DNA of 64,000 bases from NCBI RefSeq assembly GCF_001194135.2, contig NC_068987.1:40471801-40535800 (forward strand). The letters run 5' to 3'. The position numbers were made by a program, and so were the translations under genes. Of this stretch, positions 1,201 to 62,188 are shown one piece after another. The notes under the pieces were generated by a model. That model ran no database searches. It saw nothing but the letters and a program-made list of their open reading frames with translations, and was not told the DNA's origin. This DNA is from Octopus bimaculoides (lineage: Eukaryota). The number at the start of each line of letters is the position of its first letter. Positions within the stretch are counted from its first letter, which is position 1.

Positions 1201-1209
1201 GTTGTCTTA

Positions 1210-1774: not shown

Positions 1775-2184
1775 TATGTATATAATTTGAGTGTTACATT
1801 GAATTTCAAAATGACAGCAGGATCTAGGGTGTGAGGTCTTCCCAGATGTATACTGTAACTTCACCATGGATCTTTTCTCTGCTGTCCATACACAATACAC
1901 GAAGTGTGTGTACACACACACACTTCTATTGAATATTGGAGGTCTGTTGCACCTAAACAACAAAACAAAAATCTCTTTAGAGACCTTGCTGCATATAATC
2001 AATTACCTTTCTGTGTATTGTGTATGGACAGCAGAGAAAAGATCCATGGTGGAGTTACAGTATACATCTGGGAAGACCTCACACCCTAGATCCTGCTGTC
2101 ATTTTGAAATTCAATGTAACACTCAAATTATATACATATGTGATCTGATCAATAAGTGTTCAAACTGTTGCCATAGTAACAAAG
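1729..2184. repeat. Near-perfect inverted repeat, 172-bp arms (1729-1900 / 2013-2184), 112-bp spacer
   Basis: The arms are reverse complements with only a few mismatches by direct reading. Confidence 0.9.
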
Positions 2185-2253
2185 TGTGTATGTGAGCGCA
2201 CACACGCAGTAATTCTCCAACTGTTTATTTTACTGGTGCAAATCTAGCTACAT

Positions 2254-2485
2254 AGTAAGTTTGCTTCCAAACCACATGGTTCTAAATTCAGTCCCATAGC
2301 ATAGCACCTTCAGCAAGTGTCTTCTACTACAGCCTAGTAAGTGAATTTGATAGACAGGAACACTAAGAAGCTTGTTAGTCCCACTGTGTGGCACTTTGGG
2401 CAAGTGTCTTCTACTATAGCCTTGGGCCAACCAAAGCCTTGTGAGTGGATTTGGCAGATGGACACTGAAAGAAGCCCATTGTATA

Positions 2486-2490
<5 letters not shown>
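2254..2490 (+). mobile_element. tRNA-derived SINE head/core, partly duplicated, followed by (TG)n
   Basis: GGGCAAGTGTCTTCTACTATAGCC...GTGAGTGGATTTGG is the reverse complement of the SINE at 58591-59023. Confidence 0.7.
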
Positions 2491-2516
<26 letters not shown>

Positions 2517-2534
2517 CAGTGTTTGCCCCCCCCC

Positions 2535-3114
2535 NNNNNNNNNNNNNNNNNNNNNNNNNNNNNNNNNNNNNNNNNNNNNNNNNNNNNNNNNNNNNNNNNN
2601 NNNNNNNNNNNNNNNNNNNNNNNNNNNNNNNNNNNNNNNNNNNNNNNNNNNNNNNNNNNNNNNNNNNNNNNNNNNNNNNNNNNNNNNNNNNNNNNNNNNN
2701 NNNNNNNNNNNNNNNNNNNNNNNNNNNNNNNNNNNNNNNNNNNNNNNNNNNNNNNNNNNNNNNNNNNNNNNNNNNNNNNNNNNNNNNNNNNNNNNNNNNN
2801 NNNNNNNNNNNNNNNNNNNNNNNNNNNNNNNNNNNNNNNNNNNNNNNNNNNNNNNNNNNNNNNNNNNNNNNNNNNNNNNNNNNNNNNNNNNNNNNNNNNN
2901 NNNNNNNNNNNNNNNNNNNNNNNNNNNNNNNNNNNNNNNNNNNNNNNNNNNNNNNNNNNNNNNNNNNNNNNNNNNNNNNNNNNNNNNNNNNNNNNNNNNN
3001 NNNNNNNNNNNNNNNNNNNNNNNNNNNNNNNNNNNNNNNNNNNNNNNNNNNNNNNNNNNNNNNNNNNNNNNNNNNNNNNNNNNNNNNNNNNNNNNNNNNN
3101 NNNNNNNNNNNNNN
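2535..3114. other. Assembly gap (N). Other gaps: 9863-10081, 17881-18609, 41049-41058, 62840-62939
   Basis: Runs of N. Confidence 1.
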
Positions 3115-3120
3115 TATATA

Positions 3121-3154
<34 letters not shown>

Positions 3155-3157
3155 GAT

Positions 3158-3207
<50 letters not shown>

Positions 3208-3229
3208 TACAAAAGTGACAGAGGGTCCT

Positions 3230-3732
3230 AGCACCATTTATGCTAAAATAAGAGTTAAATTAACACTAAAGCCACTAAAGCACTCTAATTTAATGATTGA
3301 TAAAGGGAGGTGGGTCCCTAGCATACAAAGTCGTATCACAATTTCAAATTTTGGCATTAATACCTTAATTCTCCTCAGCAGCTTTTAACGCCAAGGGTTA
3401 AACTCAACTTCCTCTGTCAATCATATAAGAAAAACCGTTTAAATCACAAGCTAATTTTCTAAATGGTGTAAGTGTAAACAACTAATTAAAAGTGATGGAG
3501 GGTACTGGCCAGCACCATTTATACTAAAATAAGAGTTAAATTAACTCTAAAGCCACTAAAGCACTCTAATTTAATGATTGAAAAAAGGAGGTAAGTCCCT
3601 AGCATACAAAGCCGCATCATGATTTTGAATTTTGGTGTTGACACCTTAGTTCTCATCAGCAGCCTTTAACGCCTAGGGTTAAACTCAGCTTCCTCTGTCA
3701 ATCATATAAGAAAAAACATTTAAATCATATGC
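3230..3732. repeat. Tandem direct repeat, period 281 bp (about 1.8 copies)
   Basis: AGCACCATTTAT.CTAAAATAAGAGTTAAATTAAC at 3230 and 3511. The second copy is cut where the RTE begins. Confidence 0.85.
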
Positions 3733-5652
3733 TGAGGGAAAAGCACCACTGATGCTATATTTCTGGTAAGACAGCTGCAGGAGAAATACCTAGCCAAGGA
3801 TAAACCTCTGTACCTGGCTTTCGTTGACATGGAGAAAGCCTTTGACAGGGTCCCCCGATCCCTTATCTGGTGATCAATGAGGAAACTAGGAATAGAAGAA
3901 TGGTTAGTGAGAGCTGTGCGAGCCATGTACAGAGACACTGTCAGTAAGGTGAGGGTTGGCAATGAGTATAGTGAAGAATTCCACGTAGAGGTAGGGATCC
4001 ACCAAGGTCCTGTCCTTGGCGATAACAGAGGAATTCAAGACAGGATGCCTCTGGGAGCTCCTCTATGCTGACGACCTTGCACTAATCGCTGAGTCACTAT
4101 CAGAACTAGAGGAGAAGTTTCAGGTGTGGAAGCAGGGACTAGAATCGAAGGGCCTTAGAGTCAACCTAGCTAAAACCAAAGTCCTAATAAGTAGAAAGGT
4201 AGAGAAAACACAAACCCCTTCAGGTAGATGGCCCTGTTCGATTTGTAGAAAAGGTGTAGGTAGAAACTCTATAAGATGTAGCCAGTGGAAGCTATGGACA
4301 CATAAGAGGTGCAGCAATATCAAAGGCAGGTTAACTAGGAAGTTAGTTTTTGTATGTGGCAGATGTTCAGGAGTAATAAACACTGTAAATATGCAGAAAA
4401 CAACTTCTGTCTCATTCCCGGGAGAAAAACTAGATGAAATTGATAGCTTCCGCTATCTGGGTGACCAAGTTAGTAGTGGATGTGGGTGCGTTAAAAGTGT
4501 AGCTGCTAGAATAAGAATAGCCTGGCAAAGTTCAGAGAGCTCTTACCACTGCTGGCGACAAAGGGCCTCTCACTCAGAGTAAAAGGCAGACTGTATGACG
4601 CATGTGTACAAACAGCCATGCTACATAGCAGTGAAACATGGGCCGTGACTGCTGAGGACATGCGTAAGCTCACAAGAAATGAAGCCAGTATGCTCTGATG
4701 GATGAGTAATGTCAGAGTGCATACCCGACAGAGCGTAAGTATCTTGAGAGAAAAGTTGAACATAAGAAGCATCAGTTGTGGTGTGCAAGAGAGACGATTG
4801 CGCTGATATGAACATGTGGTGAGAATGGATGAGGATAGCTGCGTGAAAAAGTGCCACACTCTAGCGGTTGAGGGAACCCGTGGAAGAGGCAGGCCTAGGA
4901 AGACCTGGGATGAGGTGGTGAAGCATGACCTCCGAACATTAGGCCTCACCGAGGCAATGACTTGTGACCGTGACCTTTGGAAATATGCTGTGCGTGAGAA
5001 GACCTGGCAGGACAAGTGAGACCAAAATCCAAGGCCTGTCAGGGATGTAGCCAGCCCACTTACGCGTAACATTCCTTTATTGGACACTAAACATGGTGAG
5101 GCAAGTGAAATCGAAATCGAACTATATTGTAGGAACACTAAACTCGGCTTGCGAAGACCTGTTGAGGCAAGCGAAAGCGAAATCATAATGGCACCTGTAC
5201 CAGTGGAGCACTAAGAGCACCGTCCGAGCGTGATCGTTGCCAGAGCAGCTGTCTGGCTTCCATGCCGGTGGCACATAAATAGCACCAGCATGATCGTTAC
5301 CAACGTTGCCTTCCTGGCACTTGTATCAGTGGCACGTGAAAAGACATTCGAGCGAGATCATTGCCAGTGCCGATGGACTGGCTCCTGTGCAGGTGGCATG
5401 TAAAATACACCATTTCGAGCATTGCCAGTACCCGCCTGACTGGCCCTTGTGCCGGTAGCACGTAGAAGTACCCACTACACTCTCAGAGTGGTTGGCGTTA
5501 GGAAGGGCATCCAGCTGTAGAAACTCTGCCAAATAAGATTGGAGCCTGGGGTAGCCATCTGGTTCACCAGTCCTCAGTCAAATCGTCTAACCCATGCTAG
5601 CATGGAAAGCGGACGTTAAACGACGACGATGATGATGATGATGATGATGATG
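3733..5652 (+). mobile_element. 5'-truncated RTE-clade LINE (RT, Cys-rich insert, C-terminus, 3' UTR, (GAT)n tail)
   Basis: LYLAFVDMEKAFDRVP, VGIHQG, WELLYADDL, GLRVNLAKTKV, FRYLG, GRGRPRKTW. Ends GGACGTTAAACGACGACGAT(GAT)n. Confidence 0.93.
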
Positions 5653-7560: not shown

Positions 7561-10484
7561 CAGTGTTTCCCAAACTTTTCACACCAAATTGCAATATCAC
7601 CCACCTATTGGCCAAAAAAAAGGTCCATCACCCACTCATGTAAAAAAACCCTGACACAACACACAACACAAAATCCCATAAGACCCTCCCACCATATCAT
7701 TTGACACACACACTATATCATAGACTTGTTGCCCTGTTAGTGTCGTTTGGACTAAATATGAGGTTGTTTACAAATCCTTTATTGTGGGTTTAGTTTTGCC
7801 ATTAGTGTAAATAAAATTCTAACATTAATTCTAAATTATGCAGAAAAATTAATTTCTAGAAACTTGTGCTTTCTTTTACACTGATTTTCATTTTCCCCAA
7901 ATGAACCATTGATCAGAACTACCGATGCAAAAATAATTAATGATTGTATTATAAAGGAAAAGAATAAAACTTTTTAATGAGAACCATGTGTCTGGTGCGA
8001 TACATTCGGTTTCAAACTTATCAACTTTAGCCGCAACTTTCCTCATTGTATCACACCCAGTCCAATTCTTTTACGGGAAAATAAAGTTCCAACATTGGTA
8101 AAACCAGATTCAACCAAGTATGAGGTAGGGAAGGCAAGCAAAATAAATTTCAGATGTTGCCACAGATTTAGGGAATTCAATATACTCTGATGGTACCACA
8201 AACCTTCTTTGCCATTCAGGCGATATCACATTATGGCGTCATTGTCATTTTATAATTCTATCAATTATTCCTGAACATCATCCTCGCAATAGACTGCATT
8301 GATCTCAAATGGATTGCTATACCAATTTGGAATATTCAGCAGAATAACATCTTGAAATTGCTCCACCATGTTATCGTGCAATGATTGTAAATAGCTGTGA
8401 TATGTAGTTAAATCCTCATCAATCAATTCACCTTTCAAAGAATCAAGTTGTGGAAACTGATGGAATTGATGTTTTGAAATGTTAGTCTTAAACAACACCA
8501 ATTTCAAAATGAAGGTAGTGATAAATGATTAACAATCAACAAGAGTTTTTCTGTTTCCTTGCAATAACTTATTCAAATAATTTAATTTTGTGGATATATC
8601 ACAAAGAAAAAAGACATTGCACCTTGCAGCCACCAATGAAGCGGATAGTGGAGTATTTTCAAAGAAATAGATTTATAAAACAGTTCAACAAAGCGTAAAA
8701 CACAGTTTCCTTTTGACAGCCACTGCCTTTCGGTAAGGTATAAGAGTTTAGTATGGTCCTCATCATTTCTCAGACAGAGTTGACAGAAAATTCGATCAGA
8801 CAAGGAACTGGACTTCAATTTGTTCACAGTCTTGATAACTAACTGTAGTGCATCATTCAATCTACTGTACATATTTTTTGCCACTAAATGCTGCTGGTGT
8901 ACCAAGTAATGAACAATTAGTATCTGGTGGGAAATTTCACGCTTTAGGAGAGATGAAAAACCTCTGTATCTTCCTGTCATCAAAGGGGCTCCATCAAATG
9001 CACAGGCAAGAATATTATTGAGTGGGATATTATGTTCAAAAAGAAATGACTTGTGAGCATGAAAAATAGTTGCACCTCTTGAAATTTCTCTGTGAACAGC
9101 ATTTCCTCACAAAGTTGAAGGTCTTCGCTGAAATACCGAACATATACCATCATCAAACATTGATTGTCCACAACAGTTGACTCATCCACTTGTATAGAAA
9201 ATTTAGAACACTGAGGATTATTAATGAGCTGATGTTTGACATTGTTGGCCATTTCATTGATGTGTTGAGAAATTGTGTTATTACTAAGTGGGATCTTCTT
9301 CATAATGTTTCTCCAATTGTGTGAGACTTCCCAGACTTAGCAACAAGCAATACAATGTTGTACGATGCAATCAACCAGTCATTCTCCTGTTTACTAGTTT
9401 CCTAGAGTAGCATGTTGAATGTTTGTATTTGTTTTTTGAAAGAGGAGCTTAGTTGCAAAAAGTATGATAATGGCTTGTTCTCAAGCGTGAAGGTTTCATT
9501 GCTTCGTTGGTCAGTGTTTGATAGCAAACAAGGCACATTGGTAACTGAGAGTTCTGAAGAGAGGGAACGAATCCAAACGATAAATAATCATTACTGTACT
9601 GTCGACAAATTTTCTTGACTGAAGGCATCAGTAAAGGGAAAATGGGAAAATGAATTTCTATAGATGGCATCAGTATAGCATTCCCAAAGAGAAGAAGTCA
9701 ATAGAGCAGAGTCAGATGACACGTCTTTACTGGAGCAAATATGGATCTAGTTCGTTTGGCTGCCAGCATTTCAAAAATTAAAGTTTATTGAAAATTTTAG
9801 AATTTGGCACATTAATGTACCTTTCCAAGCTAAATTGCTGGAGTTATTCAACTTTTTCTGGANNNNNNNNNNNNNNNNNNNNNNNNNNNNNNNNNNNNNN
9901 NNNNNNNNNNNNNNNNNNNNNNNNNNNNNNNNNNNNNNNNNNNNNNNNNNNNNNNNNNNNNNNNNNNNNNNNNNNNNNNNNNNNNNNNNNNNNNNNNNNN
10001 NNNNNNNNNNNNNNNNNNNNNNNNNNNNNNNNNNNNNNNNNNNNNNNNNNNNNNNNNNNNNNNNNNNNNNNNNNNNNNNNNAGAAAATTTGTGCGAATTC
10101 GAGTTCTATACGCGGGAGTTCATACGATTATGCAAAAAAAAAAAAAAATTTGTAGTGGAGTGTGATTTAAAGCCAAGGCCTATTTGGCTGCTATTTGTAG
10201 CACGCATGACAACCATCTCAATGACTGCAACAAAAATATTCAATCGATAAACAAGTCCGCTTTTTTAATACAAAGTGATGTCTCATACGAGTAAAATCGA
10301 TAAAAGTGCATCCTTATTCTAGGCATGCCTAGATATCAGTAAATGCAGACTTAATTTCTAAAAATTCATTGTTACCCACAAAATGTTCATATTGCCCACC
10401 AAAATCTCAAATCACTCACCAGTTTTCTAGAAATTCACCCATCGCCCACCTGTAAGTTGAAATTGCCCACTTTGGGAAGCTATA
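7561..10484 (-). mobile_element. hAT (Charlie/Buster-type) DNA transposon, decayed
   Basis: Left end CAGTGTTTCCCAAA; right end TTTGGGAAGCTATA (partial TIR). 8-bp TSD ACATAGCC (7553-7560) / ACATAGCT (10485-10492). Subterminal (T/A)TCGCCCAC-like repeats at both ends. Confidence 0.88.
7980..9670 (-). pseudogene. Buster/ZBED8/SCAND3-like hAT transposase pseudogene
   Basis: YSNDYLSFGF..PMCLVC..LTNEAMKPSRL, IPLSNNTIS..INEMA, FSIQVDEST, WLSKGNCVLRF, FPTSYLVESGF. Several frameshifts and stops. Confidence 0.88.
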
Positions 10485-13001: not shown

Positions 13002-13069
13002 CTCCTACTCAACCCCTGAAATTCCTGATATCATTCACATTCTGTGTAAGTTAGACTTTTTATATGCAT

Positions 13070-15900: not shown

Positions 15901-15935
15901 AACAACCATTATGTCATATTGCTGCCTTTTATGAC

Positions 15936-18900
15936 TTGCTACAGCTGGATGCCCTTCCTAATGCCAACTGCTCCAAGAGTGTAACAGGTGCTAGTTGCAT
16001 GGCATCAGTATCTGCCATGACTACAATTTCATTTGGCTTGATGGGTCCTCTTCTCATGAATGGCATATTGCCAAAGGTCTCAGTCATTTGTCATTGCCTC
16101 TGTGAGGCCCAATGCTCAAAAGGTGTTTTTTACGTGCTAGTTACACCACACCAGCAATGGCCACATAGCCTCCGTGAAGTCCAATACTTGAAAGGTGCTT
16201 TTTACATCCAACCAGTACGGGTGCTAGTTACACAATACCAGCATTGGCCACATTAGCTCTGTGAGGCCCAAAGCTCAAAAGTTGCCGTTTTACGTGCCAC
16301 TGGCATGGGTGCTAAATACATGACACCAGCATTGGTCACATTGCTTCTGTGAAGCCCAACGCTCAAAAGATGTTCCTATGTGGTTCTGGCATGAGTGCCA
16401 GTAACATTTCACCGGCATCAGCCACGACTATGGTTTCATTTGGCTTGATGGGTCTTAACAAGCAAGGCATATCACCAAAAGTCTTGGTCACTAGTCTTTG
16501 CTTCCATGAGGCCCAAAGTTCAAAGATCATGCTTCACCACCTCATCCCGTCTTCCTGGGTCTACCTCTTCTACATGTTTCCTCCACATTCAGAGATTGGT
16601 ATGACCATAGCAGCACAGTTGTCTCACTTGCACATTACATCTGACACCTCTTATGCACAGCTTTTCTCTCAAGATGCTTACACTGTTGTACATGCACGCT
16701 GACATTGCACATCCAGCAAACATGCCAGGTTCATTTCTTTCAAGCCTATGGCAGTCACAGCCCATGTTTCACTGCCATGTAGTATAGCTCTTCGCACATG
16801 GACATCAATCTGAGGGAGAGGCCCTTTGTTGCCAACAGAGGTAGGAGCTCTCTGAACTTTGCCCAGCCTATTCTTATTCCAACAGCTACACCTCAAACCA
16901 TCCACCTCCACTACTGACCTGGTTACCTAGATAACAGAAGCTATCCACTACCTCTAGCTTACCCCACTGACATTTGATGGAGTCTATTTTCTGTACATTT
17001 TTAGTGTTTATTGTACCTGTGCACCTTCCACACACAAAAACTATTTTTCCAATTAACTTTTCTCTGATATTGCTACACCACTTATGTGTCCATAGCTTGC
17101 ACTGGGTACATCTTATGAAATTTCTACCTACACCTTTCCTACAGATCAAGCAGGGCCATCTACCTGAAGGCATTTGTAATTTGTCTACTTTCCTACTTGC
17201 TAAGACTTTGGTTTTGGCTAGGGTAACTCTAAGGCCCTTCAGTTCTAGACCTTGTTTCCACACCTGATATTTCTTGTCTAGTTCTGATAGTGATTTAGCT
17301 ATAAGAACAAGGTCATCGGCATAGAGGAGCTCCCAGGTGCTTCCCCCATGTCAACAAAGGCCTAGTACAGAGGTTTATATTTAGCTAGGTATTTCCCTTG
17401 CAGCTGCCTTACCAGAAATATAGCATCAGTGGTGCTTCACCATGGCACAAAACCAAACTAAATCTCATCTAGACTAACTCTCTCCCTAATTACTTGAGCT
17501 ATGATCTTCTCTGTCTGTGACTTTCATCACCTGATCCAATAATTTGATACCTCTGTAATTATTTCTCTCTAAGGCATTTTAGTAGAAAGTGGGTTATACA
17601 TCTTTAGATTGTATACCTGACTTTCTACTATAAAATTAAAGAAATAGACGGAACGCTGAACTCCAGACTAAACAACTTAAACAACATTTATTTACTTGGT
17701 AAAACATACATATCTTTAGTTATACATCTTTAGAGGTGAGAATAACGAGCTGTCGAGTATAAGACCGAAAGATGTAGGGACAGCTTTTAAACACACGTCC
17801 ATGCTCAATCGCTGGCCAGCGAGAAAGAGAATGAATTGAGCGGGAAACGCTTGCTTTATTAATTCTACGCATGCGCAGGCNNNNNNNNNNNNNNNNNNNN
17901 NNNNNNNNNNNNNNNNNNNNNNNNNNNNNNNNNNNNNNNNNNNNNNNNNNNNNNNNNNNNNNNNNNNNNNNNNNNNNNNNNNNNNNNNNNNNNNNNNNNN
18001 NNNNNNNNNNNNNNNNNNNNNNNNNNNNNNNNNNNNNNNNNNNNNNNNNNNNNNNNNNNNNNNNNNNNNNNNNNNNNNNNNNNNNNNNNNNNNNNNNNNN
18101 NNNNNNNNNNNNNNNNNNNNNNNNNNNNNNNNNNNNNNNNNNNNNNNNNNNNNNNNNNNNNNNNNNNNNNNNNNNNNNNNNNNNNNNNNNNNNNNNNNNN
18201 NNNNNNNNNNNNNNNNNNNNNNNNNNNNNNNNNNNNNNNNNNNNNNNNNNNNNNNNNNNNNNNNNNNNNNNNNNNNNNNNNNNNNNNNNNNNNNNNNNNN
18301 NNNNNNNNNNNNNNNNNNNNNNNNNNNNNNNNNNNNNNNNNNNNNNNNNNNNNNNNNNNNNNNNNNNNNNNNNNNNNNNNNNNNNNNNNNNNNNNNNNNN
18401 NNNNNNNNNNNNNNNNNNNNNNNNNNNNNNNNNNNNNNNNNNNNNNNNNNNNNNNNNNNNNNNNNNNNNNNNNNNNNNNNNNNNNNNNNNNNNNNNNNNN
18501 NNNNNNNNNNNNNNNNNNNNNNNNNNNNNNNNNNNNNNNNNNNNNNNNNNNNNNNNNNNNNNNNNNNNNNNNNNNNNNNNNNNNNNNNNNNNNNNNNNNN
18601 NNNNNNNNNGTTTGAAGAGGTACGCTTTTACAGAACGATCGACAGACACAATTTCTGTACTATCATTAGCGAAAACCTCGAAGAAAAATGTTCTTAACCC
18701 AAGATGAAAGAACGACCGTGCGAAATGAATAACAAGAGTTATTGTGTGACATCAAAGATGTATGTGTAATGTGAGAGTGTGAAATGCGACATATAAAAAT
18801 ATAAAAAGCAGGCCGTAAATCCTGTCTGTTTCTCGTGAGTGGAAAAAAAATCCACTCTAACAGAGACGAGAATAAAAACCGCTCTTGTTGAGTCGTGTTG

Positions 18901-21060
18901 ACTATGTTTGGAGATGTTGGTAATGTGTAGTTCAGTCTCCATGGCCGTATTTGTTCTTTAGTCGAGGTTCACCAGTTATAACTTGGTAATCCGTAGTTCA
19001 TGCTGCGTTTTTTTCTTCGTCGGGGGTCACCACTTTAGTTCATGCTGCGTCGGGGGTCACCACTTTAGTAGAAAGTGGGTTATACATCTTTAGATTGTAT
19101 ACCTGACTTTCTACTATAAAATTGAAGAAATAGACGGAACGCTGAACTCCAGACTAAACAACTTAAACAACATTTATTTACTTGGTAAAACATACATATC
19201 TTTAGTTATACATCTTTAGAAGTGAGAATAACGAGCTGTCGAGTATAAGACCGAAGATGTAGGGACAGCTTTTAAACACACGTCCATGCTCAATCGCTGG
19301 CCAGCGAGAAAGAGAATGAATTGAGCGGGAAACGCTTGCTTTATTAATTCTACGCATGTGCAGGCGTTACTACAGCATCAATTTACCTTTGTAGCAGTTG
19401 ACTATGGCACTGCTACACCAGTCATTGGGTATGACTCCTTCATGTAACACCTGGTTAACTATACAGGTGACTAAACTATAACCCACACCGCTAGATAGTT
19501 TAAGCATTTCAGTGATTATTCCTGATGGGCTGGGGGCTTTCCCCATCTTCATATCCTTCCTGGCTTTATTTACAATGCTACTGTCTGTCTGGATTGCTGG
19601 TCCCTCTGTTGGATCAACATTATGTAGACTCTCCTTCTCTCATGCATTCTCTAAATTCAGAAGCCTTTCACAGTAACACTTCCAAGCCTCTTTCTTTGTA
19701 GAGTCGCTAACTGCAAGTGAACCCTCACCCATGTGAACACACTTCTCTCCTATGACATTACAATTTTCTCTGGTACACTGTCTTGCAAACCAAAACACCT
19801 CAAGCCACTGGTCCTCACACAGCAAAACATTGGCTACTTTCTTTTCTGCTTCACCCTTGGCTAAGTATACCTGCCTCCTAGCTTCCCTTCTAACTGCCTG
19901 ATATAACTCCTTGCTACCCCCACATTTCCAGTCCTTCCAAGCCTGTTTCTGTGCTCTGATGGCCCTATCAACTACATTGTTCCACCACCATGTCACCCTA
20001 GATCTGGTTGGGACTTTGGACCACCCACAAATTTGGTCTGTGGCTCTCAGTAAGTTGTTTCCCAGTTATCCTTTATACTGCAAGTTTGTAACTCCTCCTC
20101 CTTCTCATCAAAAGCTTCAGTTAGGACGTCCCTAAACCTCTGTCTATTCAAAGGATCTTTAAACTTCCAGATCTTTCTTTTCCAAACTGGCTTGCTTCTT
20201 GGGCACCTTCATGCCCACTAACGAAGTCACTAATGAGTAATCTATGCTGAGGGGTACATTCTTCATCAGGGAAGGCCTTTGCATTTAAGAGCAACCACAA
20301 ATCCCTTTTTCTGGTGAGGATGTAGTCAATCTGGCAAGAATGGTCACCAGATTTATAGGTTATCAGGTGACTGGCTGGCTTTCTGAAGTTGGTGTTGCAG
20401 ATCAATAGGTCATTTGTATCACTGAACTCCAGCAACCTTGTTCTCTCTTTGTTTCAGGAGCCAATTCCATGGCCCCCATGCACTCTATGAAAGACACTTG
20501 GGAGCTGCCCAACATGTCAATTGAAATCACCAGCCACAAAGATAAGGTCACTGTCATTTATCTTCAAAGTGGCCTGCAAAAGAGTGTCATAAAAGCAGTC
20601 CTTCTGTTCATTTGGCAAACCCAATTGTGGGGGCATAGGCAGAGATGAATTTTGCAGTGCTATTCTGCAAAACTAGTCTAAGCTTAAGTATCCTATCACA
20701 TATTCTGACTACTTCAATTACCTTATTTACCCATTTCTCTGCTAGAAGTATGCCAACATTTCCTACCCTGTACCTGTTGCCCTCCCAGAAGAATCTATAC
20801 CTATACCTTTTCCCAGTGAGGAACCTGGCTGGAACTCCCTTCCACTGAATTTCTTGGATGCAGCACATAGCAACACATCTCTTTTCAAGCATCTCAACAA
20901 TTTCACCTGACCTACCCTGCAATGTACCTACATTGACAGTGCCAACTCTGAGGGAATGTATGGGGGGACAGGAGGTAACATGGGGAAGAACTGCAGTTAT
21001 TGGTATTTGAGAAGAAGACTGTAACAAACATTTGCCAACAGACATGACATAGCATTTTTA
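15936..21060 (-). mobile_element. Near full-length decayed RTE LINE (APE, RT, Cys-rich insert), interrupted by an LTR element at 17578-19374
   Basis: LRVGTVNVGTL..CCIQE, ISAYAP, QIDYIL, GKAPSPSG, NCYKGK|ALERNNYRGIKL across the insertion, LLYADDL (with an internal deletion), and the 3' UTR. Confidence 0.92.
17578..19374 (-). mobile_element. Young, internally deleted Gypsy-type LTR retrotransposon (~1.8 kb, TRIM-like)
   Basis: LTRs at 19064-19374 and 17578-17880 (cut by the gap), about 4 differences in ~303 bp. Minus strand starts TGTAGTA. 4-bp TSD GCAT (17574-17577 / 19375-19378). PBS TGGTGACCCCCGACG follows the 5' LTR. Integrase-C-like EIVSVDRSVKAYL at ~18620-18660. Confidence 0.85.
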
Positions 21061-25624: not shown

Positions 25625-27625
25625 TAGATACAAAAAGGTAGTGGAACAGTGTAGTTGACAGGGCATATTTGAGTGAAGAAACAAGCCTGGAAGGACAAGA
25701 AGGGCGGACAAGAAGCAAGGAACTATATCAGGTAGCTAGAAAGGAAGCTAGGAGAAAATTATACTTAAAGTAAAGTTAAATTACCTTCTTGAGTCATGCC
25801 AACTCATAAGAGCCAGTTCCCCAGTTTTCACGGTGTATAAATTCTCCACCTGGACAGGATGCTGATCCATTGCAGGATTACTCATTTTTGCCAGCTGAGT
25901 GGACTGGAGTAACGTAAAATGAAGCATTTTGCTCAAGAACACTATGTGTTGCCTGGTCCAGGAATTGAAACCACAATCTTACGATCATGAGGCCAACACC
26001 CTAACCACTAAGCCATGCACTTCCACTGCAGTTATATTTAGCCAGGGATGAAGCAGAAAAGAATGCCAATGTTCTGTAGTGTGAGAATCAATGGCTTGAA
26101 GTATTTCAGTTTGCAAGACAGTGTGTCAGGTAAAATTGTGATGTTGTAGGAGAGAAGTGCATTCTCATGGATGATGGTTTACTCTGCAAAGAAAGTGGCT
26201 TGGAAGTGCCACTATGAAAGGCTGCTAAAGGTAGAGAATACACAGGAGAAGGATACACAGAAGCTTGGGATAGATGAATGGTTGGTGAGAGCTGTACAAG
26301 CTATGTACAGGGATGCTGTCAGTACAGTGAAGGTTGGCAATGAGCATAGCAAGGAATTCAGTGTACAGGTGGAGTTTACCAAGGATCAATTCTCAACACC
26401 CTGGTGTACATCATAGTCCTCCAGGCTATAACAGAGAAATTTAAGACTGGCTACCTTTGGGAGCTCCTCTATGCTGATGACTTAGTTCTTGTGGCTGAAT
26501 CACTAACAGAACTCGAGAAGAAATTTCAGGTGTGGAAGCAAGGCCTTAGAGTTTAGGTTAGTAGGAAAACAGATAAATCACAAATGCCTTCAGGGTGATG
26601 GCCCTGTTCAATATGTAGATAAGGTGTAGGTAGAAATTTGACAAAGTGTACCCAGTGCAAGCTATGGACACATAAGAGGTATCAGAGAGAGGTTAACAGA
26701 GAAAGTAGTCTTTGTCTGTGGCAGGTGTATAGTACAATAAACACTAGGAATATACAGAAAATAGACCCTGTCAAATGCCCAAGAGAATATTTAGAAGTAG
26801 TAGATGACTTCCAATATCTAGGTGACCAAGTCACTAGTGGAAGTGGATGCTCTGAGAGCATAGCTGCTAGACTATGAATAAGCTGGGCAAAGTTCAGAGA
26901 GTGTCTACCTTTGTTGGTAACAAAGGGCCTTTCCTTCAGAGTATGATACCATGCAGAGTATGATGCCATGCAGAGTATGATGCCAGATTGTATGATGCCA
27001 TGCTATATGGCAGTGCAAAGGCTTATAAGAAATGAAGCTAATATGCTTCACTGGATGTGCTATATCAGCGTGCATGAACAACAGATTGTAAGCATATTGA
27101 GAGAAAAATTGGGTATAAGAGGCATCAAATGTAGTGTGCAAGAGAGAAGACTGCACTGGTATGCTCATGTGATGAATATGGATGAGGATACCTGTGTAAC
27201 GAAGTGGCAATCTCTAACAGTGGAAGGAACCTGTGGAAGAAGTTGATCCATGGAATGAAGTGGTGAAGTATGATCTTTGAATGTTGAGTCTCATGGAAGC
27301 AGTGACAAGTGATCAAGTCCCTTGGCGATTTGCTGTGCTTTAGAAGACATGTCAAGCTAAGTGAAATTGTATTTATGGCCAGTGCTGGCGACACGTAAAA
27401 GGCAGTCATGCCAGCAACACGTACAAGGTACCCATGCTAGTGACACATAAAGGGTATCTGTGTCGGTGACACATAAAAGGCACCCACTACACTTTGTGGT
27501 TTAGTTGGCTTCAGGAAGGGCATCCAGCCATAGAAACCAAGCCAAACCAAACTGGAGCCTGGTATTGCTCTCCAGCTTCAACTCATGCCAGTACAGAAAA
27601 CTATACTACATGTTGTTGATGATTA
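25625..27625 (+). mobile_element. Decayed RTE LINE fragment with internal deletions, interrupted by a SINE
   Basis: KLGIDEWLVRAVQAMYRDA, WELLYADDL, CTQCKLWTHKR, FQYLGDQ, and the 3' UTR. Confidence 0.88.
25777..26027 (-). mobile_element. tRNA-derived SINE inserted in the RTE
   Basis: Minus-strand head TGGCTTAGTGGTTAGG..GGTTTCAATTCC (A/B-box-like) and a (TTTAC/TTTAA)-like tail. The RTE sequence resumes on both sides. Confidence 0.7.
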
Positions 27626-27904
27626 TATACACACACACACACACATAGATATTTGAGCGGTCTATCCCTTATTCAATTAATGTGTCTTGTCTAGCAAGCT
27701 ACATGGTGACCATGCTGGTATCATTTAAAAAACACTGAGTACATTCTGTAAAGTTGTTGGCATTAGGAAAAGTATCCAGCTGTAGAAACCATGGAAAAAT
27801 AGATGTTAAATAATGGTGGAGATGATGATTATATATATTTATACATACAGACACACACACACACACACATATATAAATGTATGTATGTTTATAAATCTAA
27901 TAAA

Positions 27905-35304: not shown

Positions 35305-36666
35305 TATCCATGTTATGTAAGATACACAGATTGCTATTCTGAATTAAAACTGCTTCCCTAACTAATAACAAAGAAACAGAGTAATGAAAGGGCATAAATA
35401 AATTTGAGAAATTAAGAAAAACTTGCAAAGTTACACTAATGAAGGGAAGCCCAAAATGCATTACAGAAGATAAAAAAAACCATTAGTTATTCCATAAGTA
35501 AACTTAAACATTCTGAAATAAACTTGAAAAAAGTAGGGGTCTTTATCTTATTCATGCATAAAGTTTAATTTTTATTGTACAAGTTTTTTGTACAAGTAAT
35601 TACAATTAACTGTCCAGAAAAATAAACGGCATGGCTGAAAAAGTCATAAAAGGATAATTATACCCTAATTTGCATTCATGAAATGTTAACAATAAAGTTG
35701 GATCAAGAGGTTTTAATGGAACCAGACTGAGATGGTAGCTGCTATCAATTAGCATCAAACATCAGCAAGCAAATACCATCTTGATAGAAATTCAGGTGAC
35801 AGTTGTGAGAGCTAGCTATATGGCTGAAAAGAGATGACGAAACCTAGCTGGAGAGGTGATGTGTCGGGTGTGAGGCAGGTACCTGTTTGTTTGTATAGCA
35901 AGTCATACCTGCAAATTTCCACAATTTGAATGGTGATGATGATCCTGAAATTGACTTAAGATTGAATAAATCAGTTGACTCAGTAAGCAGAGCTTCACAT
36001 CAATGAGTGGAAGCTTGAGTATTGTAAAGCAGTTGAAAGGAATGCCCTAAAACAGTGCACATTCTCTCCTGATGACCTCTGAAACTTACTGGCATCTGGT
36101 ATGCAGATCTTTTGATTGGCTGCACTTGCACAAGCAAGCTGCTTCCACGTCAAATGTGTAATGTCCAATAATTATAAAGACTTGTTTGACAATAACCTCT
36201 CTACATATTCTATGATCTAGTGAGTCACATGCAACTTCCATCCAAGCCAAACACTAGCCACTCTTGCCCAAACATTCCTCCACAGAACATTATCCCACTA
36301 GTTTTCTCTTCTAGCTCATGTTTTTCACACAACTATTGACTAACAGATGTTCAAGTTGAAAATAAACTGTATCAATCTCATCAATCTTAAATGATCTGAA
36401 GGTCATGGGTTTGATCAGGTATGAGTATGCTATTTCCCTCATTGACTACAGAAGAAGAAAAAAACTAAAATAGAAAAACACTCCAAAGACTTTTGCACTG
36501 CAGTGAGTTGCTGATTATCATATGGTGGATATTAAAACACAATATTCTGTAGCATCAGAGTAGATCAAAGTTGTTGATTATCATGGGGAAAATATTTTTA
36601 AAAAAACTAAAAAAAATTATTTTTCTGTGATGCAGAGGCAGACAAAAGATAGAAGAATGTAAGACT

Positions 36667-37832
36667 GAAAGCCCATGGGAACTACTATATGCTGATGATC
36701 TTGCCCTCATGGCAGAATCTTTAACAGAATTAGAAAAGAAATTCCAAGTGTGGAAACAGAACCTAAAATCAAAAGGTTCTTAAAGTAAACTTAGCAAAGA
36801 TCAAGGCCCTATTAAGCAAGAAATTGGATAGGACCCTTCACCCATCTAGTAAATTGATATGTAGGAAGGGTGTAAGCAGATACTCCAGTCAGTGTAACCA
36901 GTGCAAGCTATGGACACAGGAGGTGCAGTGGAATAGTAGGAAGGCTAACAGAGAAAGTAGTGTTTGTATATGGAAGATGTACAGGAACCATAAAGACCAC
37001 AGATATATGAGACACTGATTTCCTTAAATGTCCCAGTGGCTTGCTGGAAGTTGTAGATAACTTCTGCTACCTAGGTTACCTAATTAGCAGTGGACAAGGT
37101 TGTATAGAAAGTGTAAGAATGGGAAAAGCTCATAGAGCTTTTACCTCTGTTGGCAACAAAAGGTCTCTTACTTTGGGTGAAGGGAAAATTATATGATACA
37201 TGTGCATGAACTGAGATGTTGCATGGTGGTGAGACATGGGTCTTGAACACAGAAGACATGTGAAGGTTGGAGAGGAACGAAGCTTATATGCTCTACTGGA
37301 TGTGCAATGCCAGTGTGCATGTACAAGAGAGCATTGGTGTATTGAGAGAAAAGTTGGGCACAGGTGGGATTATATGCAGTGTGCAAGAGAAGAGACTGTG
37401 CTGGTTGGGTCATTTGATGCAGATAGATGAGGACAGTTGCATAAAGAAGTAATCATTTAAAGTGAATGGAAGTTGTGAAAGAAGGAGACCCAGGAAGACA
37501 TGGGAAAAGCATTGAAGTATTAAGGAGATAACAGAGGACCAAGATATGTGGTGCATTGCTGTACTTGAGAAGACCTGCTTGCCATAGCAGAAATGAGATC
37601 CTAAAACCAAGGTGCCACATAAAAAGCATTGGTGTAGTAGCTGGTGCCACATAAAAAGCATTGGTGTAGTAGCTGGTGCCACATAAAAAGCATCCAGTAC
37701 ACTCTGTGGAGTGATTGACATAAGGAAGGGCTTCCAGCTGTAGAAACCAAACCAAAACAGACTATGGAACCTGGCGTTACCAGTTCCTGCCAAACCATCC
37801 AACCCATGGAAAACGGTTGTTAAATGACAATA

Positions 37833-37862
<30 letters not shown>
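36667..37862 (+). mobile_element. Decayed RTE 3' portion with (GAT)n tail and a 32-bp tandem repeat in the UTR (37605-37690)
   Basis: WELLYADDL, CNQCKLWT, RNEAYMLYWMCN, and the tail. Confidence 0.88.
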
Positions 37863-41048: not shown

Positions 41049-41063
41049 NNNNNNNNNNCACAC

Positions 41064-43373: not shown

Positions 43374-46197
43374 CCATCATCATCAAGATCCTTTAACTGA
43401 TGCAGCCAGTCGTTGGGGTTCACTCTAGACACTTTAATAGTCAGCTGTCACTACTGGTCTATGTCCTCTCATGCATAACAGGTTTACTATGTTGTGACCT
43501 GTCCAGTCTTTGATGCTGTCAAACCAGGTTTTCTGTCTGCCTTTCTTTCACCCTCCTTCAGCTGTGCCTTGAAAAACGGTTCTGGGCAGGGAGTTGCAGG
43601 CAGTATACATGACCTTCCCAGGCAAGCTTTTGCCTTTTTACCTGTACAAGAAGTGGTTCCTGCCTGTCAGCGTATTCATTGATTTGCTGACTGACAAAGC
43701 AATTTTTGTGTTCTTTGTACAGGATGTGTAATAGCCTTCTGAAGCACTTATGCTTAAATACCTGAATTATTCACTTCATGTCAGCTGTAAGAGTCCAGCT
43801 CTCACACCCATACAGAAGGATCAATGTCACCAGGGTCTTGTATACTGAGTCTTGTTGGAAAACTAATGGAATTGCTTTTCCATATGGAGTTCAGCCTCAT
43901 CATGGCAGCAGAGGCTAAATTGAGTCTTGTTGTTATCTCCTTTTGAGATCTGCCATCCTTGGTCAAAGTGGATCCTAAGTACTTGAAGGTATCCACCTCC
44001 TTAAGTCTCTTTCTGTTTACCATGATGTTTGTTGCTATGTTTTGGCTGCTACTATTAACCAGGATTTTGCTCTTTTCTGGGCTGATCTCCATCTGTATGC
44101 TCCTGATACTTTTTCCAGTCTGGGGGTGAGCTCCTGTAGTTCTGCTTTTTAACAGGTCAATATCATCAGCAATGTGCAGGTTGGAAAATGGCCATTCTCC
44201 AATGGAAATGGAGGGATGGAGGTCTTCAAGTGTTTCCTGCATGATGTTCTCCAAGAAGATGTTAAAAAGCACTGGAAAGAGGGCATAGCCTTTTTGAACA
44301 CCCACTGGTGTCCTTAAGAATTCTCCAATGTTGTTCAGAACTGCACTGCTTGAGTTTTCATTACTTCAATGTTGTTGTCAAAGTTGTAATTTTCCATTAC
44401 ATGACACAACCCATTGTGCCAAACATGGTCAAAGCCTTTTTTGAAGTGATGAAGTTGTGGAAGGATGGAGGAACTTACAAACTTTATAGGTATGCCAGGA
44501 ATATCAAAGGGCTAGTTGAAGTTAGTGGACTGGATTTGGTCACACAGCAACAGAAGGCCACAAACTGTGATATAGTGGAAATGACATCAAGCATGAACAT
44601 GGAGTGGGCTTCAATGTTAACAAAGTAAGAGTAAGTTCAGTCATCAGCTGTACAACAGCATCCAGCAGGCTCATCACCATACGTGGCTGCAAGACTACTG
44701 AATATTACCATCATACAAATGGTGTCATTGTACCAATGACAATTAATATACCAAAGCTTGATGGTGCCATTGAGAAATTCTATGAAGACCTGAAGAGAAT
44801 CACCAAGGCAGCTCCTAAAAGAGATGTTCTCAATGTCCTAAGAGACTGAAACACCAAAGTAGGCCTGGATACATATGACTAATTGGCTGGGACAGTAGGA
44901 CAATTCAGGATCAGAAAAACCAACCATCATGGACGGTGACTCCTAGAATTTGCTAGCAAGCACAAGCTGACATTGTTCCCACACAGAACAACATGGTATG
45001 CACCCAATGGCAAGTATCCCAACCAAATTGACTTCATCCTTGCACATTAAAAGTTCAAGTTCAGCATTAAGAAGGTTAGAATGAGGACTTTCCTTGGTGA
45101 TGACAATGAAGCTCAAACTGAAAAGGGTCCACAAGAAAAGAGACACATGTATTAGATTTGAGGTAGACAAACTAAAAGATTGCATCAGAGTTTGAAACGA
45201 AAGTGGGTGGCAGGTTTGCAGCCCTTAACCTTCTGGAAGATGATATAAACTCCCAGACTGAAAATATCAAGGAAGCACTTCAGAAAATGGTTCTAGAAGT
45301 CTTAAGGAGAGAAAGAAAGAAAAAGAAACCATGGGTCACTGACTGATGACATGTTGGATCTATGTGATTTAAGACAGGCTCTGAGGAAAACCAAGCTAAT
45401 AGATCAAGAGGCAAGTCAGCAATACAATGCTGTGAATAGGAAGGTTAGGAAGAAAATGAGGGAAAGCCAAAGAGGAATGGATAACAGACTAGTGCAAAAT
45501 AATCGAAGCTGGGACAAAGAAGGGCAACCACCCTAACGAAAACAAAGAAACACACTACCAATATCATTCAGAACAAAACAAGCCAGCTTCTCACATAAGA
45601 ATGATGTCATCAAAAGATGAGTAATGCAAATACCTTTACAATCACAAATTCAAACATGACAGCAACATACAAGACAATCCCTCCTCCTCTTCCAATAACA
45701 ACAACAACAGCAGCAGCAACAACAGAGAACTTGGGGATACTCCAATTCTCCAGAAGGAGGTCAGAGAGGTAATGCGCATGCTCAAAGATGGGAAATCTTC
45801 AAGAGTGAATAACATCTTATCAGAGCTCCTAAAACACAGAAAGCCAAAGCTTGTCAAGACACTAACAGTTATCTGTCAGAAGAAATGGAAGATGAAACAG
45901 TGACCAAAGGAGTGGACCCAGTTACTGATGATATCCATTCCAAAGGAAGGCAACTTTAAGACTCTGCCAGAATTACAGAACAATCAGCCTAATTAGCCAC
46001 CCTGGCAAAATATTGCTAAGAGTTCTGCTTAATAGGCAGAAGGGGAAGGCAGAAGAAATCCTTGCAGAAGAACAGGCAGGTTTTAGGCCTCAAAGGAATA
46101 CTGTGGAGCAGATATTAAACACTAGATTGTTCACTGAGAAACATCTGCAACACCAAACTGATCTCTATCAAAATTTCATTGACTTCAAAAAGGCCTT
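43374..46197 (-). mobile_element. RTE (BovB-like family) insertion with inverted 5' segment (twin-priming architecture)
   Basis: 11-bp TSD TATAATGCTAA at 43363-43373 and 46198-46208. 43374-~44465 (-) is the tail plus RT from HNF(ID)FKKAF onward. ~44471-46197 (+) runs from the APE start to YQNFIDFKKAF. Confidence 0.88.
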
Positions 46198-47685: not shown

Positions 47686-47730
47686 CTGTAGCATATTATG
47701 GTTGCATAATGAAAAATTGTGTTATATCTA

Positions 47731-61137: not shown

Positions 61138-62020
61138 ATCATCATCATCATCATCATCATCATCATTATCATCAAAAGTCTGTTGTCCATGCTGGCATGG
61201 GTTGGATGGTTTGACCAGGGCTGGTAAGCTGAGGGGCTGCACCAGATTCCAGTCTATTTGGCATGGTTTCTATGGCTGGGGGCCCTTCCTAACACCAACC
61301 ACTCCAAGAGTGTAATGGGTGCTTTGACAAGCCACTGGCATAGGTGCCAGTTGTGTGACACCAGTATCTGCCATGACTACGATTTCACTTGGCTTGATGG
61401 ATCTGCCTTCTCAAGCACAGCATATTGCCAAAGGTCTCACCATGAAGCCCAGTGCTTGAAAGGTGCTTTTTACATGCTACCAACACAGTTACTAGTTCTG
61501 TGACACCAGCATTGGCTACATTGCCTCCATGAGACCCAACACTTGAAAGTGCTTTTTACATGCCACCAGCATGGGTGCCTGTTATGTGACACAGACAATA
61601 GCCGCAAGTATAATTTCACTTGGTTTCATACATCTTTGCAAGCACAGCATATTGCCAAATGTCTCAGTCACAAGTCATTGCCTCCATGAGGCCCAGGGTT
61701 CAAAGATCATGCTTCACCACCTCATCCCATGTCTTTCTGGGTCTCCCTCTTCCACAGCTTCCTTTCGCTGGTACAGATTGGCACTTCTTCACACAGCTTA
61801 CCACATCCATATGCATCACATGACCATACCAACACAGTTGTCTCTCTTACACACCACATCTTATGCCTCATATGCACTTGTACCATGAATTCTTTGCTAT
61901 ATTAGTTGCCAACCATCACCCTACTGACAGCATCCCTGTACATGGTTTGTACAGCTCTCACCAAACACTCGTCTACCCCTAGTTTTCACATTGACCATCA
62001 GATAAGGGATCGAAGGACTT
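61138..62020 (-). mobile_element. RTE fragment (3' UTR, tail and a fused RT piece)
   Basis: (CAT)n tail, 3' UTR, and SLIW.S..KLGVDECLVRAVQTMYRDA at ~61900-62010. Confidence 0.85.
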
Positions 62021-62188
62021 TGTGCATGCGTGTGTGTTTGTGTGTATGTGTATGTTTCCTTTCTCCCCCTCTCTCTACCTCTTCCTCTCTCGCTCTCTCA
62101 AACGCATACACGTGCAAGTACACAATCATTCAGTAAAATATAATTCATGTTCATCAATGTTTTGTAAATATACCACGATTTTCACTAG

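What the first reader, a model, noticed from the sequence alone, without database searches (positions are those of the whole stretch)
4235..4366. PHD-type C4HC3 zinc finger inserted inside the reverse-transcriptase domain of an RTE LINE family
The GLRVNLAKTKV and FxYLG motifs are normally joined by a short loop. Here the loop carries C-x2-C-x10-C-x2-C-x4-H-x2-C-x14-C-x2-C, with an aromatic residue two positions before the seventh Cys (FVCGRC), which is PHD-finger spacing. All eight ligands are present in the copy at 17021-17152 (-): CLICRKGVGRNFIRCTQCKLWTHKWCSNIREKLIGKIVFVCGRC. Variants occur at 4235-4366, ~26605-26730 and ~36850-36980, so it is family-wide. The second RTE family (43374-46197) has the ordinary short loop. 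PHD fingers often read histone H3 tails, so this could couple target-primed reverse transcription to chromatin (inference). I do not know whether it has been described.
Basis: partly seen in the sequence, partly recalled or inferred. Interest (0 to 1): 0.72.

Follow-up and report, generated by a model that had tools for sequence, protein, structure and literature searches.

The report
PHD zinc finger inside LINE polymerase
A family of octopus jumping genes (RTE-type LINEs), and a large group of relatives in other animals, carries a small zinc-binding PHD finger spliced into the middle of its reverse transcriptase, at a loop that touches the target DNA in a related element; it may help the element grip DNA or chromatin when it inserts.

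Summary
At 4235-4366 (+) and 17021-17152 (-), a 44-residue C4HC3 module lies in frame between RT motif 6 (GLRVNLAKTKV) and the FxYLG motif. Copy 2 keeps all eight ligands. Its isolated domain passes Pfam's PHD threshold, and the predicted fold matches only PHD fingers. Copies 1, 3 and 4 are decayed, and copy 5 has lost the region.

The module is not confined to octopus. In 78 of 80 full-length APE+RT ORFs (about 1000-1100 aa) all eight ligands are at least 90% conserved. These sequences form one clade, next to RTE-like elements with the ordinary short loop, which points to a single acquisition. Named hosts cover Mollusca, Cnidaria and hagfish, and many copies come from marine metagenomes.

The nearest solved relatives are Pygopus PHD fingers, which read H3K4me. 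The RTE finger, however, is strongly basic (mean net charge +6.3, against -5/-6 in Pygopus) and lacks the acidic loop that binds H3. It sits where the R2Bm RT "loop 6a" contacts upstream target DNA.

My best reading, which is inferred, is a flexibly tethered module that holds target DNA or chromatin during target-primed reverse transcription. Histone reading remains possible. I found no paper describing it, although automatic annotation already labels these proteins PHD.

The parts
3736..5651 (+). Copy 1 of the PHD-bearing RTE family. It is 5'-truncated, holding the RT from about motif 3 onward, the C-terminal region, a 3' UTR of about 630 nt, and a (GAT)8 terminus.
   Evidence: tblastn with full-length relative P0313, aa 619-1047. 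ORFs 4016-4582 and 4816-5019. (GAT)n at 5628-5651.
4235..4366 (+). PHD finger of copy 1. Seven of eight ligands are intact; ligand 4 is Cys->Trp.
   Evidence: Translation. Pfam PHD 19.9 bits within the 188-aa ORF, below the gathering score.
15933..20979 (-). Copy 2, nearly full length. The APE endonuclease is at 20979-20220, the RT follows, and the C-terminal region reaches about 16430. It is interrupted by the assembly gap at 17881-18609 and carries stops and frameshifts.
   Evidence: tblastn with P0313, aa 40-908. blastn against copy 1. N runs.
17021..17152 (-). PHD finger of copy 2. All eight ligands are present: C-x2-C-x10-C-x2-C-x4-H-x2-C-x14-C-x2-C.
   Evidence: Translation. Pfam PHD 26.2 bits, above the gathering score of 24. 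AlphaFold pLDDT 79, and the Foldseek top hits are PHD fingers.
26032..27790 (+). Copy 3, 5'-truncated and decayed. The PHD lies at about 26605-26745, with an in-frame stop and a frameshift or deletion that removes ligand 6.
36651..37861 (+). Copy 4, 5'-truncated and decayed. The PHD lies at about 36860-36985, with ligand 1 deleted, ligand 7 Cys->Tyr, and a frameshift. The copy ends in (GAT)9.
61138..62027 (-). Copy 5. An internal deletion removes the PHD and neighbouring RT sequence. The copy ends in (GAT)9.
   Evidence: blastn: copy-1 coordinates 3850-3981 and 4761-5652 match, with nothing between them. tblastn..
43374..46197 (-). Comparison element: a second RTE-like family, whose RT has the ordinary short loop and no PHD.
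   Evidence: ORF 43802-44305 (-). Pfam RVT_1, with a weak DUF6451 hit. Weak tblastn hits with P0313.

Best explanation
**Shown.** The window holds five old, mostly 5'-truncated copies of one RTE-type LINE family. The genome is most likely Octopus bimaculoides or a close relative. The single ORF has an N-terminal APE endonuclease and an RT, with no C-terminal Cys-rich domain. A genuine PHD-type C4HC3 zinc finger of about 45 residues lies in the loop that follows RT motif 6 (GL+VN..KTKVM) and precedes the FxYLG hairpin. The finger is flanked by low-confidence, presumably flexible, linkers.

The insert defines one large clade of animal RTE elements. It appears to have been gained once, and its ligands and several other residues have been kept in intact ORFs. 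By sequence it is closest to Pygopus-type PHD fingers.

**Inferred.** During target-primed reverse transcription the finger acts as an enlarged "loop 6a". It reaches from the palm toward the upstream target DNA and helps hold the target. It most likely does so through its conserved basic surface, contacting the DNA backbone or nucleosomal DNA, and possibly also a histone tail. This may make up for the absence in RTE proteins of the N-terminal DNA-binding fingers of R2 and the C-terminal Cys-rich domain of L1.
For: **Identity as a PHD finger**
- Pfam PHD scores above threshold for copy 2. It scores 18-25 bits in five full-length relatives that also have Exo_endo_phos and RVT_1.
- A profile of 51 fingers finds Pygopus PHD best (E = 7.5e-9). 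BPTF, PHF13, Alfin-like, PHF2 and TAF3 follow.
- Pfam PHD_Pygo gives faint precomputed hits.
- In the AlphaFold model of the copy-2 finger, 49 of the top 50 Foldseek hits are PHD fingers, with TM 0.72-0.73 to Pygopus.

**Conservation**
- All eight ligands are at least 90% conserved in 80 full-length ORFs that are 35-61% identical to P0147.
- Trp two residues before His is present in 78 of 78 sequences, and F/Y two residues before Cys7 in 78 of 78.

**Single origin**
- In an NJ tree built without the PHD columns, all PHD-bearing ORFs form one clade.
- Short-loop elements from Necator, plants and P0352/P0353 lie next to that clade.

**Position in the RT**
- R2Bm GLRLNCRKSAVL (655-666) aligns with P0147 GLKVNIEKTKVM (717-728).
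- R2Bm loop 6a (672-677) contacts upstream target DNA, and deleting it blocks nicking (PMC10499050).

**Basic surface**
- Net charge is +6.3 on average, and +10 and +13 in window copies 2 and 1.
- Charge per residue is +0.126 in the finger against +0.034 in the rest of the ORF, and the finger is the more basic part in 77 of 78 sequences.
- Some basic columns are 71-94% K/R.

**Flexible tethers**
- In the full-length model (pLDDT 89.6, pTM 0.82) the finger scores 82-91. The flanks score 67 and below 50.
Against: - No binding experiment exists, and I could not read model coordinates, so the direction in which the finger points is not measured.
- The R2 paper says its loop 6a is particular to R2, so the analogy rests on position only.
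- The nearest solved relatives bind histone tails, not DNA.
- The invariant Trp and the frequent aromatic residue before Cys1 fit a methyl-lysine half-cage.
- A basic composition could partly reflect the generally basic nature of LINE proteins.
Confidence: 0.45

Rival explanations
1. Histone reader. The finger binds the H3 N-terminal tail, probably methylated at K4 as Pygopus does. This would bias nicking and reverse transcription toward particular chromatin.
For: - Best profile matches in the PDB are almost all H3K4me2/3 readers: Pygopus, BPTF, PHF13, Alfin-like, PHF23, PHF2, TAF3, CFP1, Spp1 and DIDO1.
- The motif YPCG[VI]C...C..W.H..C is shared with Pygopus.
- Trp before His is present in 78 of 78 sequences, and an aromatic residue two positions before Cys1 in 68 of 78.
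- PHD fingers in ORF1 of CR1/L2 LINEs have been proposed to target chromatin (PMC4120745).
Against: - Net charge is +6.3, against -6/-5 for Pygopus 1/2.
- The C2-C3 loop is two residues shorter than in Pygopus and has no acidic residue in 69 of 78 sequences.
- The H3 tail is itself strongly basic.
- Ten of 78 sequences have D, H or N at the first cage position.
Confidence: 0.3
2. The finger has another role: a protein-protein or RNA contact, or a structural one. For example, it could recruit a host factor, bind the element's own 3' UTR or template, or stabilise the palm and primer grip.
For: - PHD fingers also bind non-histone partners. Pygopus PHD binds BCL9/B9L, as the names of entries 4up0 and 2xb1 show.
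- The finger is adjacent to the FxYLG hairpin.
- RTE-type elements must recognise a specific 3' tail. In this family the tail is a conserved 3' UTR ending in (GAT)n.
Against: - There is no positive evidence for any partner.
- Low-confidence linkers on both sides argue against a rigid structural role.
- In R2 the template RNA is held by N-terminal RT extensions, not by loop 6a.
Confidence: 0.2
3. The pattern is a chance Cys/His arrangement or a non-functional relic confined to a few octopus copies.
For: Three of the four fingers in the window are damaged.
Against: - The pattern matches once in the window and never in 100 shuffles.
- Ligands are conserved in 78 divergent intact ORFs from several phyla and from marine metagenomes.
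- The window copies are simply dead copies.
Confidence: 0.02

Closest known systems
RTE-group non-LTR retrotransposons (RTE-1, BovB, Rex3 and relatives)
   Same: - Single ORF of about 1000-1100 aa, with an N-terminal APE endonuclease and then the RT.
- No C-terminal zinc knuckle.
- Short element (3.2-4.7 kb contigs).
- The 3' end is a simple repeat, (GAT)n in this family.
- The C-terminal RLRWFGHV...RGRPRKTW motif resembles that of BovB. This comparison is from my memory, not from a test.
   Different: - Carries an insert of about 60-65 residues, with a PHD finger, in the loop after RT motif 6.
- The short-loop relatives found here have 11-18 residues in the window where PHD-bearing ORFs have 70-81. 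They are Necator, plant elements, P0352/P0353, and the window's second family.
Pygopus PHD finger (Pfam PHD_Pygo PF27108; PDB 2vpe, 4up0)
   Same: - Best profile match (E = 7.5e-9).
- Shares YPCG[VI]C, the spacing of all ligands, and Trp before His.
- Predicted fold has TM 0.72-0.73.
   Different: - The RTE finger is basic (+6.3 against -5/-6).
- It lacks the acidic EVNDDQD loop.
- Hits to PHD_Pygo are only faint.
- It is embedded in a polymerase, not at the C-terminus of a Wnt co-activator.
PHD fingers in ORF1 proteins of CR1/L2-type LINEs (Kapitonov & Jurka 2003; Metcalfe & Casane 2014, PMC4120745)
   Same: A PHD finger encoded by a LINE. Its function has not been tested, and chromatin targeting has been proposed.
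   Different: Those fingers lie in ORF1p, or at the N-terminus of the ORF, in the Jockey superfamily. This one lies inside the RT palm of an RTE-group element. I could not compare the sequences.
Loop 6a of the R2Bm reverse transcriptase (PMC10499050)
   Same: It occupies the same topological site, just after the motif-6 strand. In R2 this loop contacts upstream target DNA and is needed for nicking.
   Different: R2's loop is six residues long and reads bases. The RTE insert is a whole zinc-finger domain on linkers, and its DNA contact is only inferred.
Chromodomain of chromovirus (Ty3/Gypsy) integrases
   Same: A transposon enzyme that carries a histone-reader type domain thought to guide integration (established knowledge, not tested here).
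   Different: Different domain, different enzyme (integrase C-terminus) and different class of element.

Membership tests
PHD finger (Pfam PF00628) | C4HC3 ligand pattern with canonical spacing | tested here: met
   C-x2-C-x10-C-x2-C-x4-H-x2-C-x14-C-x2-C in copy 2. All eight ligands are at least 90% conserved in 80 ORFs, and all are invariant in the 51-sequence alignment of fingers.
PHD finger (Pfam PF00628) | Score at or above Pfam's gathering threshold (24 bits) | tested here: met
   The isolated copy-2 domain scores 26.2 bits. P0138 scores 24.9 and P0186 24.5. Copy 1 (19.9) and P0127, P0147 and P0123 (18-23.3) fall just below.
PHD finger (Pfam PF00628) | Cross-braced two-zinc fold with a small beta-sheet | tested here: met
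   This rests on a predicted structure only. AlphaFold gives pLDDT 79 with strands 18-20 and 27-29. Of the top 50 Foldseek PDB hits, 49 are PHD fingers, with probabilities 0.82-1.0 and TM up to 0.73.
PHD finger (Pfam PF00628) | Binds two zinc ions | not testable with these tools
   Needs metal analysis of purified protein.
H3K4me-reading PHD fingers (Pygopus/BPTF/ING type) | Aromatic cage: Trp between Cys4 and His, plus an aromatic residue near Cys1 | tested here: inconclusive
   Trp is present in 78 of 78 sequences. An aromatic residue lies two positions before Cys1 in 68 of 78, as in Pygopus YPCG. This is a sequence proxy only.
H3K4me-reading PHD fingers (Pygopus/BPTF/ING type) | Acidic surface or loop that receives the basic H3 tail (R2, K4) | tested here: not met
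   The C2-C3 loop has no acidic residue in 69 of 78 sequences. Net charge averages +6.3, against -6/-5 in Pygopus 1/2.
H3K4me-reading PHD fingers (Pygopus/BPTF/ING type) | Measured binding to H3 peptides | not testable with these tools
   Needs a peptide array, ITC or NMR.
RTE group of non-LTR retrotransposons | Single ORF with N-terminal APE endonuclease followed by RT, and no ORF1 | tested here: met
   Pfam finds Exo_endo_phos and RVT_1 in P0127, P0138 and P0147. In contig L002 the ORF runs 107-3193 of 3323 nt. Copy 2 has its endonuclease at 20979-20220.
RTE group of non-LTR retrotransposons | No Cys-rich or CCHC domain after the RT | tested here: met
   No zinc-finger family was found C-terminal of the RT in five full-length ORFs.
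RTE group of non-LTR retrotransposons | 3' end is a short simple repeat rather than poly(A) | tested here: met
   (GAT)n lies at the 3' ends at 5628-5651, 37835-37861 and 61138-61164 (-).
RTE group of non-LTR retrotransposons | RT groups with reference RTE elements (RTE-1, BovB, Rex3) in a phylogeny | not testable with these tools
   No Repbase or Dfam reference sequences were available. The nearest short-loop relatives are Necator and plant elements, about 38% identical over the APE and RT regions.

The most novel reading that the evidence does not exclude
The finger descends from a Pygopus-like histone reader that an early animal RTE element captured. It still reads a histone mark, such as H3K4 methylation, from inside the reverse transcriptase. 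This LINE lineage would then choose or sense its chromatin target with a reader domain built into the polymerase. That would be a targeting principle not described for any LINE.
Probability: 0.25. Interest if true: 0.8.

Novelty: new variant of a known kind. Interest (0 to 1): 0.6.

Why it matters
LINE reverse transcriptases are regarded as structurally conservative, and accessory domains normally sit at the ends of the ORF or in ORF1. Here a whole folded domain has been kept inside the palm of the RT, in intact ORFs from at least three animal phyla. It sits at a loop that contacts target DNA in R2.

- **Target choice.** If the finger holds DNA or reads chromatin, it offers a direct handle on how RTE elements pick targets. 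RTE elements lack the DNA-binding domains of R2 and L1. The group also includes horizontally spreading elements such as BovB.
- **Engineering.** The finger marks a permissive site in LINE RTs that could take foreign targeting domains, which is of interest for retrotransposon-based gene insertion tools.
- **Annotation.** IMG names some of these ORFs "predicted transcriptional regulator". UniRef calls octopus fragments "Zinc finger PHD-type domain-containing protein", which hides the fact that they are transposon fragments.

Tried and rejected
- **Other zinc modules (RING, C1, ZZ, FYVE).** These score lower than PHD in Pfam, and only one FYVE appears among the top 50 fold hits. Rejected.
- **Chance motif.** Rejected.
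- **Insert limited to octopus.** Rejected.
- **Literature.** Eight full-text searches combined PHD, RTE, non-LTR, reverse transcriptase, Pygo, AlphaFold and PF27108. They found PHD fingers only in ORF1 of CR1/L2 elements and nothing on an RT-internal PHD. Kapitonov & Jurka 2003 is not held.
- **RTE-2_OV.** The octopus paper on RTE-2_OV reports only a "C2H2 zinc finger". Its sequence is not in the held supplementary text, so I could not tell whether that finger is this PHD.
- **Model coordinates.** They are not exposed, so I could not measure how the finger is oriented in the full-length model.
- **Hydractinia locus L001.** It holds only a fragment.
- **Third protein search.** Using the finger-only profile, it returned only short fragments of 60-102 aa. 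It gave no new taxa and no non-RTE contexts.
- **Cluster look-up.** It gave no species names, only metagenome sources.
- **Pfam scan of four other window ORFs.** No hits.

Full report
**1.

The 188-aa ORF at 4016-4582 (+) reads ...LLYADDLALIAESL...GLRVNLAKTKVLISRKVEKTQTPSGRWPCSICRKGVGRNSIRCSQWKLWTHKRCSNIKGRLTRKLVFVCGRCSGVINT...IDSFRYLGDQV. The stretch 4235-4366 is the Cys/His module, with ligand 4 mutated to Trp.

tblastn and blastn find two further decayed fingers and a fifth copy whose finger region is deleted:
- Copy 3, about 26605-26745, has a stop codon and a frameshift, and ligand 6 is lost.
- Copy 4, about 36860-36985, has lost ligand 1, has Tyr at ligand 7, and is frameshifted.
- Copy 5, 62027-61138 (-), lacks the region altogether.

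A generic PHD pattern matches once in the six-frame translation of the window and never in 100 shuffles. The other RTE-like family (ORF 43802-44305, -) has the usual short loop.

**2. What the elements are**

The best protein hits are Octopus bimaculoides fragments, so the window is from that genome or a close relative. All copies share a 3' UTR of about 630 nt that ends in (GAT)n.

Copies 1, 3, 4 and 5 are 5'-truncated. Copy 2 is nearly full length (20979-15933, -). Its APE endonuclease lies at 20979-20220, and an assembly gap interrupts it at 17881-18609. The copies are 66-73% identical to one another at the DNA level. They are old and dead.

**3. The module is a PHD finger**
- The isolated copy-2 domain scores 26.2 bits on Pfam PHD, above the gathering score of 24. 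RING, C1, ZZ and other zinc modules score lower.
- A profile of 51 such fingers finds solved PHD fingers only. Pygopus is best (E = 7.5e-9), followed by BPTF, PHF13, Alfin-like, PHF23, PHF2 and TAF3.
- The precomputed Pfam family PF27108 on these proteins is PHD_Pygo, with faint hits.
- AlphaFold folds the copy-2 finger with pLDDT 79. Of the top 50 Foldseek hits in the PDB, 49 are PHD fingers, with TM 0.72-0.73 to Pygopus and 0.69 to TAF3.

**4. It defines a large clade, not an octopus oddity**

A word-indexed search found 243 relatives. Many are annotated RVT_1+PHD, and the named ones come from Octopus, Hydractinia symbiolongicarpus (Cnidaria) and Myxine glutinosa (hagfish). An exhaustive profile search found 466 cluster representatives at E <= 1e-30.

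Full-length ORFs of about 1000-1100 aa have Exo_endo_phos, RVT_1 and PHD. They sit on contigs of 3.2-4.7 kb, many from marine metagenomes such as Tara Oceans.

In an alignment of 80 full-length ORFs, 78 carry the finger, and all eight ligands are at least 90% conserved. These ORFs are 35-61% identical to P0147. Also conserved are:
- Pro before Cys1.
- GVG-x-NS.
- Trp before His, in 78 of 78.
- SG after Cys6.
- F/Y before Cys7, in 78 of 78.

The two ORFs without the finger (P0352, P0353) have the ordinary short loop: 11 residues in the stretch that holds 70-81 in PHD-bearing ORFs. So do the next relatives, from Necator americanus and plants.

An NJ tree built without the finger columns puts all PHD-bearing ORFs in one clade, next to these short-loop elements. 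This indicates one acquisition followed by retention. The tree is a simple distance tree without support values.

**5. Where the finger sits**

In the full-length AlphaFold model of P0147 (pLDDT 89.6, pTM 0.82) the finger (745-787) scores 82-91. Its flanks score 67 (731-740) and below 50 (793-801). This fits a folded domain on flexible tethers. The whole model matches human L1 ORF2p and R2 TPRT complexes.

HMMER aligns R2Bm GLRLNCRKSAVL (655-666) with P0147 GLKVNIEKTKVM (717-728). The R2Bm "loop 6a" (672-677) lies just downstream of that strand. It contacts the upstream target DNA, and its deletion inhibits nicking (PMC10499050). The RTE finger therefore occupies the loop-6a site. This is a positional argument. 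I could not inspect model coordinates.

**6. What the finger most likely does**

Two lines of evidence point in different directions.

For histone reading:
- The nearest solved fingers read H3K4me2/3.
- The Pygopus-like YPCG[VI]C motif and the cage Trp are kept.

For nucleic-acid binding:
- The finger is very basic. Mean net charge is +6.3 (range +1 to +11), and +10 and +13 in window copies 2 and 1. Pygopus 1/2 score -6/-5.
- Charge per residue is +0.126 in the finger against +0.034 in the rest of the ORF. The finger is the more basic part in 77 of 78 sequences.
- The C2-C3 loop is acidic in Pygopus. In the RTE finger it is shorter and has no acidic residue in 69 of 78 sequences.
- Several basic positions are 71-94% conserved as K/R.

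A basic module at the loop-6a site fits a clamp on target DNA or nucleosomal DNA better than a reader of the very basic H3 tail. I therefore rank the DNA/chromatin-holding role first (about 0.45). Histone reading comes second (about 0.3), another partner or a structural role third (about 0.2), and chance or relic last (about 0.02). None of these has been tested experimentally.

**7. Comparison with what is known**

The elements meet the testable features of the RTE group:
- A single APE+RT ORF.
- No C-terminal zinc knuckle.
- A simple-repeat 3' end.

Placement against reference RTE sequences could not be done.

PHD fingers are known in LINEs, but in ORF1 proteins of CR1/L2 elements (PMC4120745). 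No paper I could search describes one inside an RT. Automatic annotation has seen the domain: UniRef names it, and Pfam hits are precomputed.

[quoted passage not shown] I could not check whether that is the same module.

**8. Verdict**

The structural interpretation is supported and extends to a broad animal clade. The histone-reading idea is open and, on charge, not favoured. I file this as a new variant of a known kind, of moderate to high interest.

Noticed in passing
window 13067-13495 (-), 47730-48129 (-), about 40196-40207 (+): Orphan pieces of the family's 3' UTR ending in (GAT)n, with no coding part. They could be extremely 5'-truncated copies, or a SINE that shares the LINE tail.
   Followed up: partly
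window 5020-5627: The 3' UTR of the family contains several degenerate repeats of a unit of roughly 60-70 nt (ggcac...ccagtggcac...gatcgttgcca...). I saw this by eye in the sequence and did not analyse it.
   Followed up: no
window 3211-3452 and 3488-3733: Two direct copies, 87% identical and about 245 nt each. They lie just upstream of copy 1 and next to the assembly gap at 2535-3114. Their origin is unknown.
   Followed up: no
window 61138-62027 (-): Copy 5 has an internal deletion that removes roughly aa 705-980 of the ORF, including the finger. It keeps the 3' UTR and the (GAT)n end.
   Followed up: partly
window 43374-46197: A second RTE-like family with a short RT loop. Its RT C-terminal part gives a weak hit to Pfam DUF6451 (E = 0.098). 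That family is also precomputed on the distant relative P0377.
   Followed up: partly
proteins P0032 and P0117: NCBI "hypothetical proteins" of Salmonella enterica serovar Derby, on contigs of about 1 kb, are RTE RT+PHD fragments. They are almost certainly animal DNA contaminating bacterial assemblies.
   Followed up: no
proteins P0382, P0383, P0385: JGI/IMG names full-length RTE ORFs of this clade "predicted transcriptional regulator". The PHD hit is presumably the reason.
   Followed up: no
window 2535-3114, 9863-10081, 17881-18609, 41049-41058, 62840-62939: Runs of N (assembly gaps). The third one interrupts the only near-full-length copy.
   Followed up: yes
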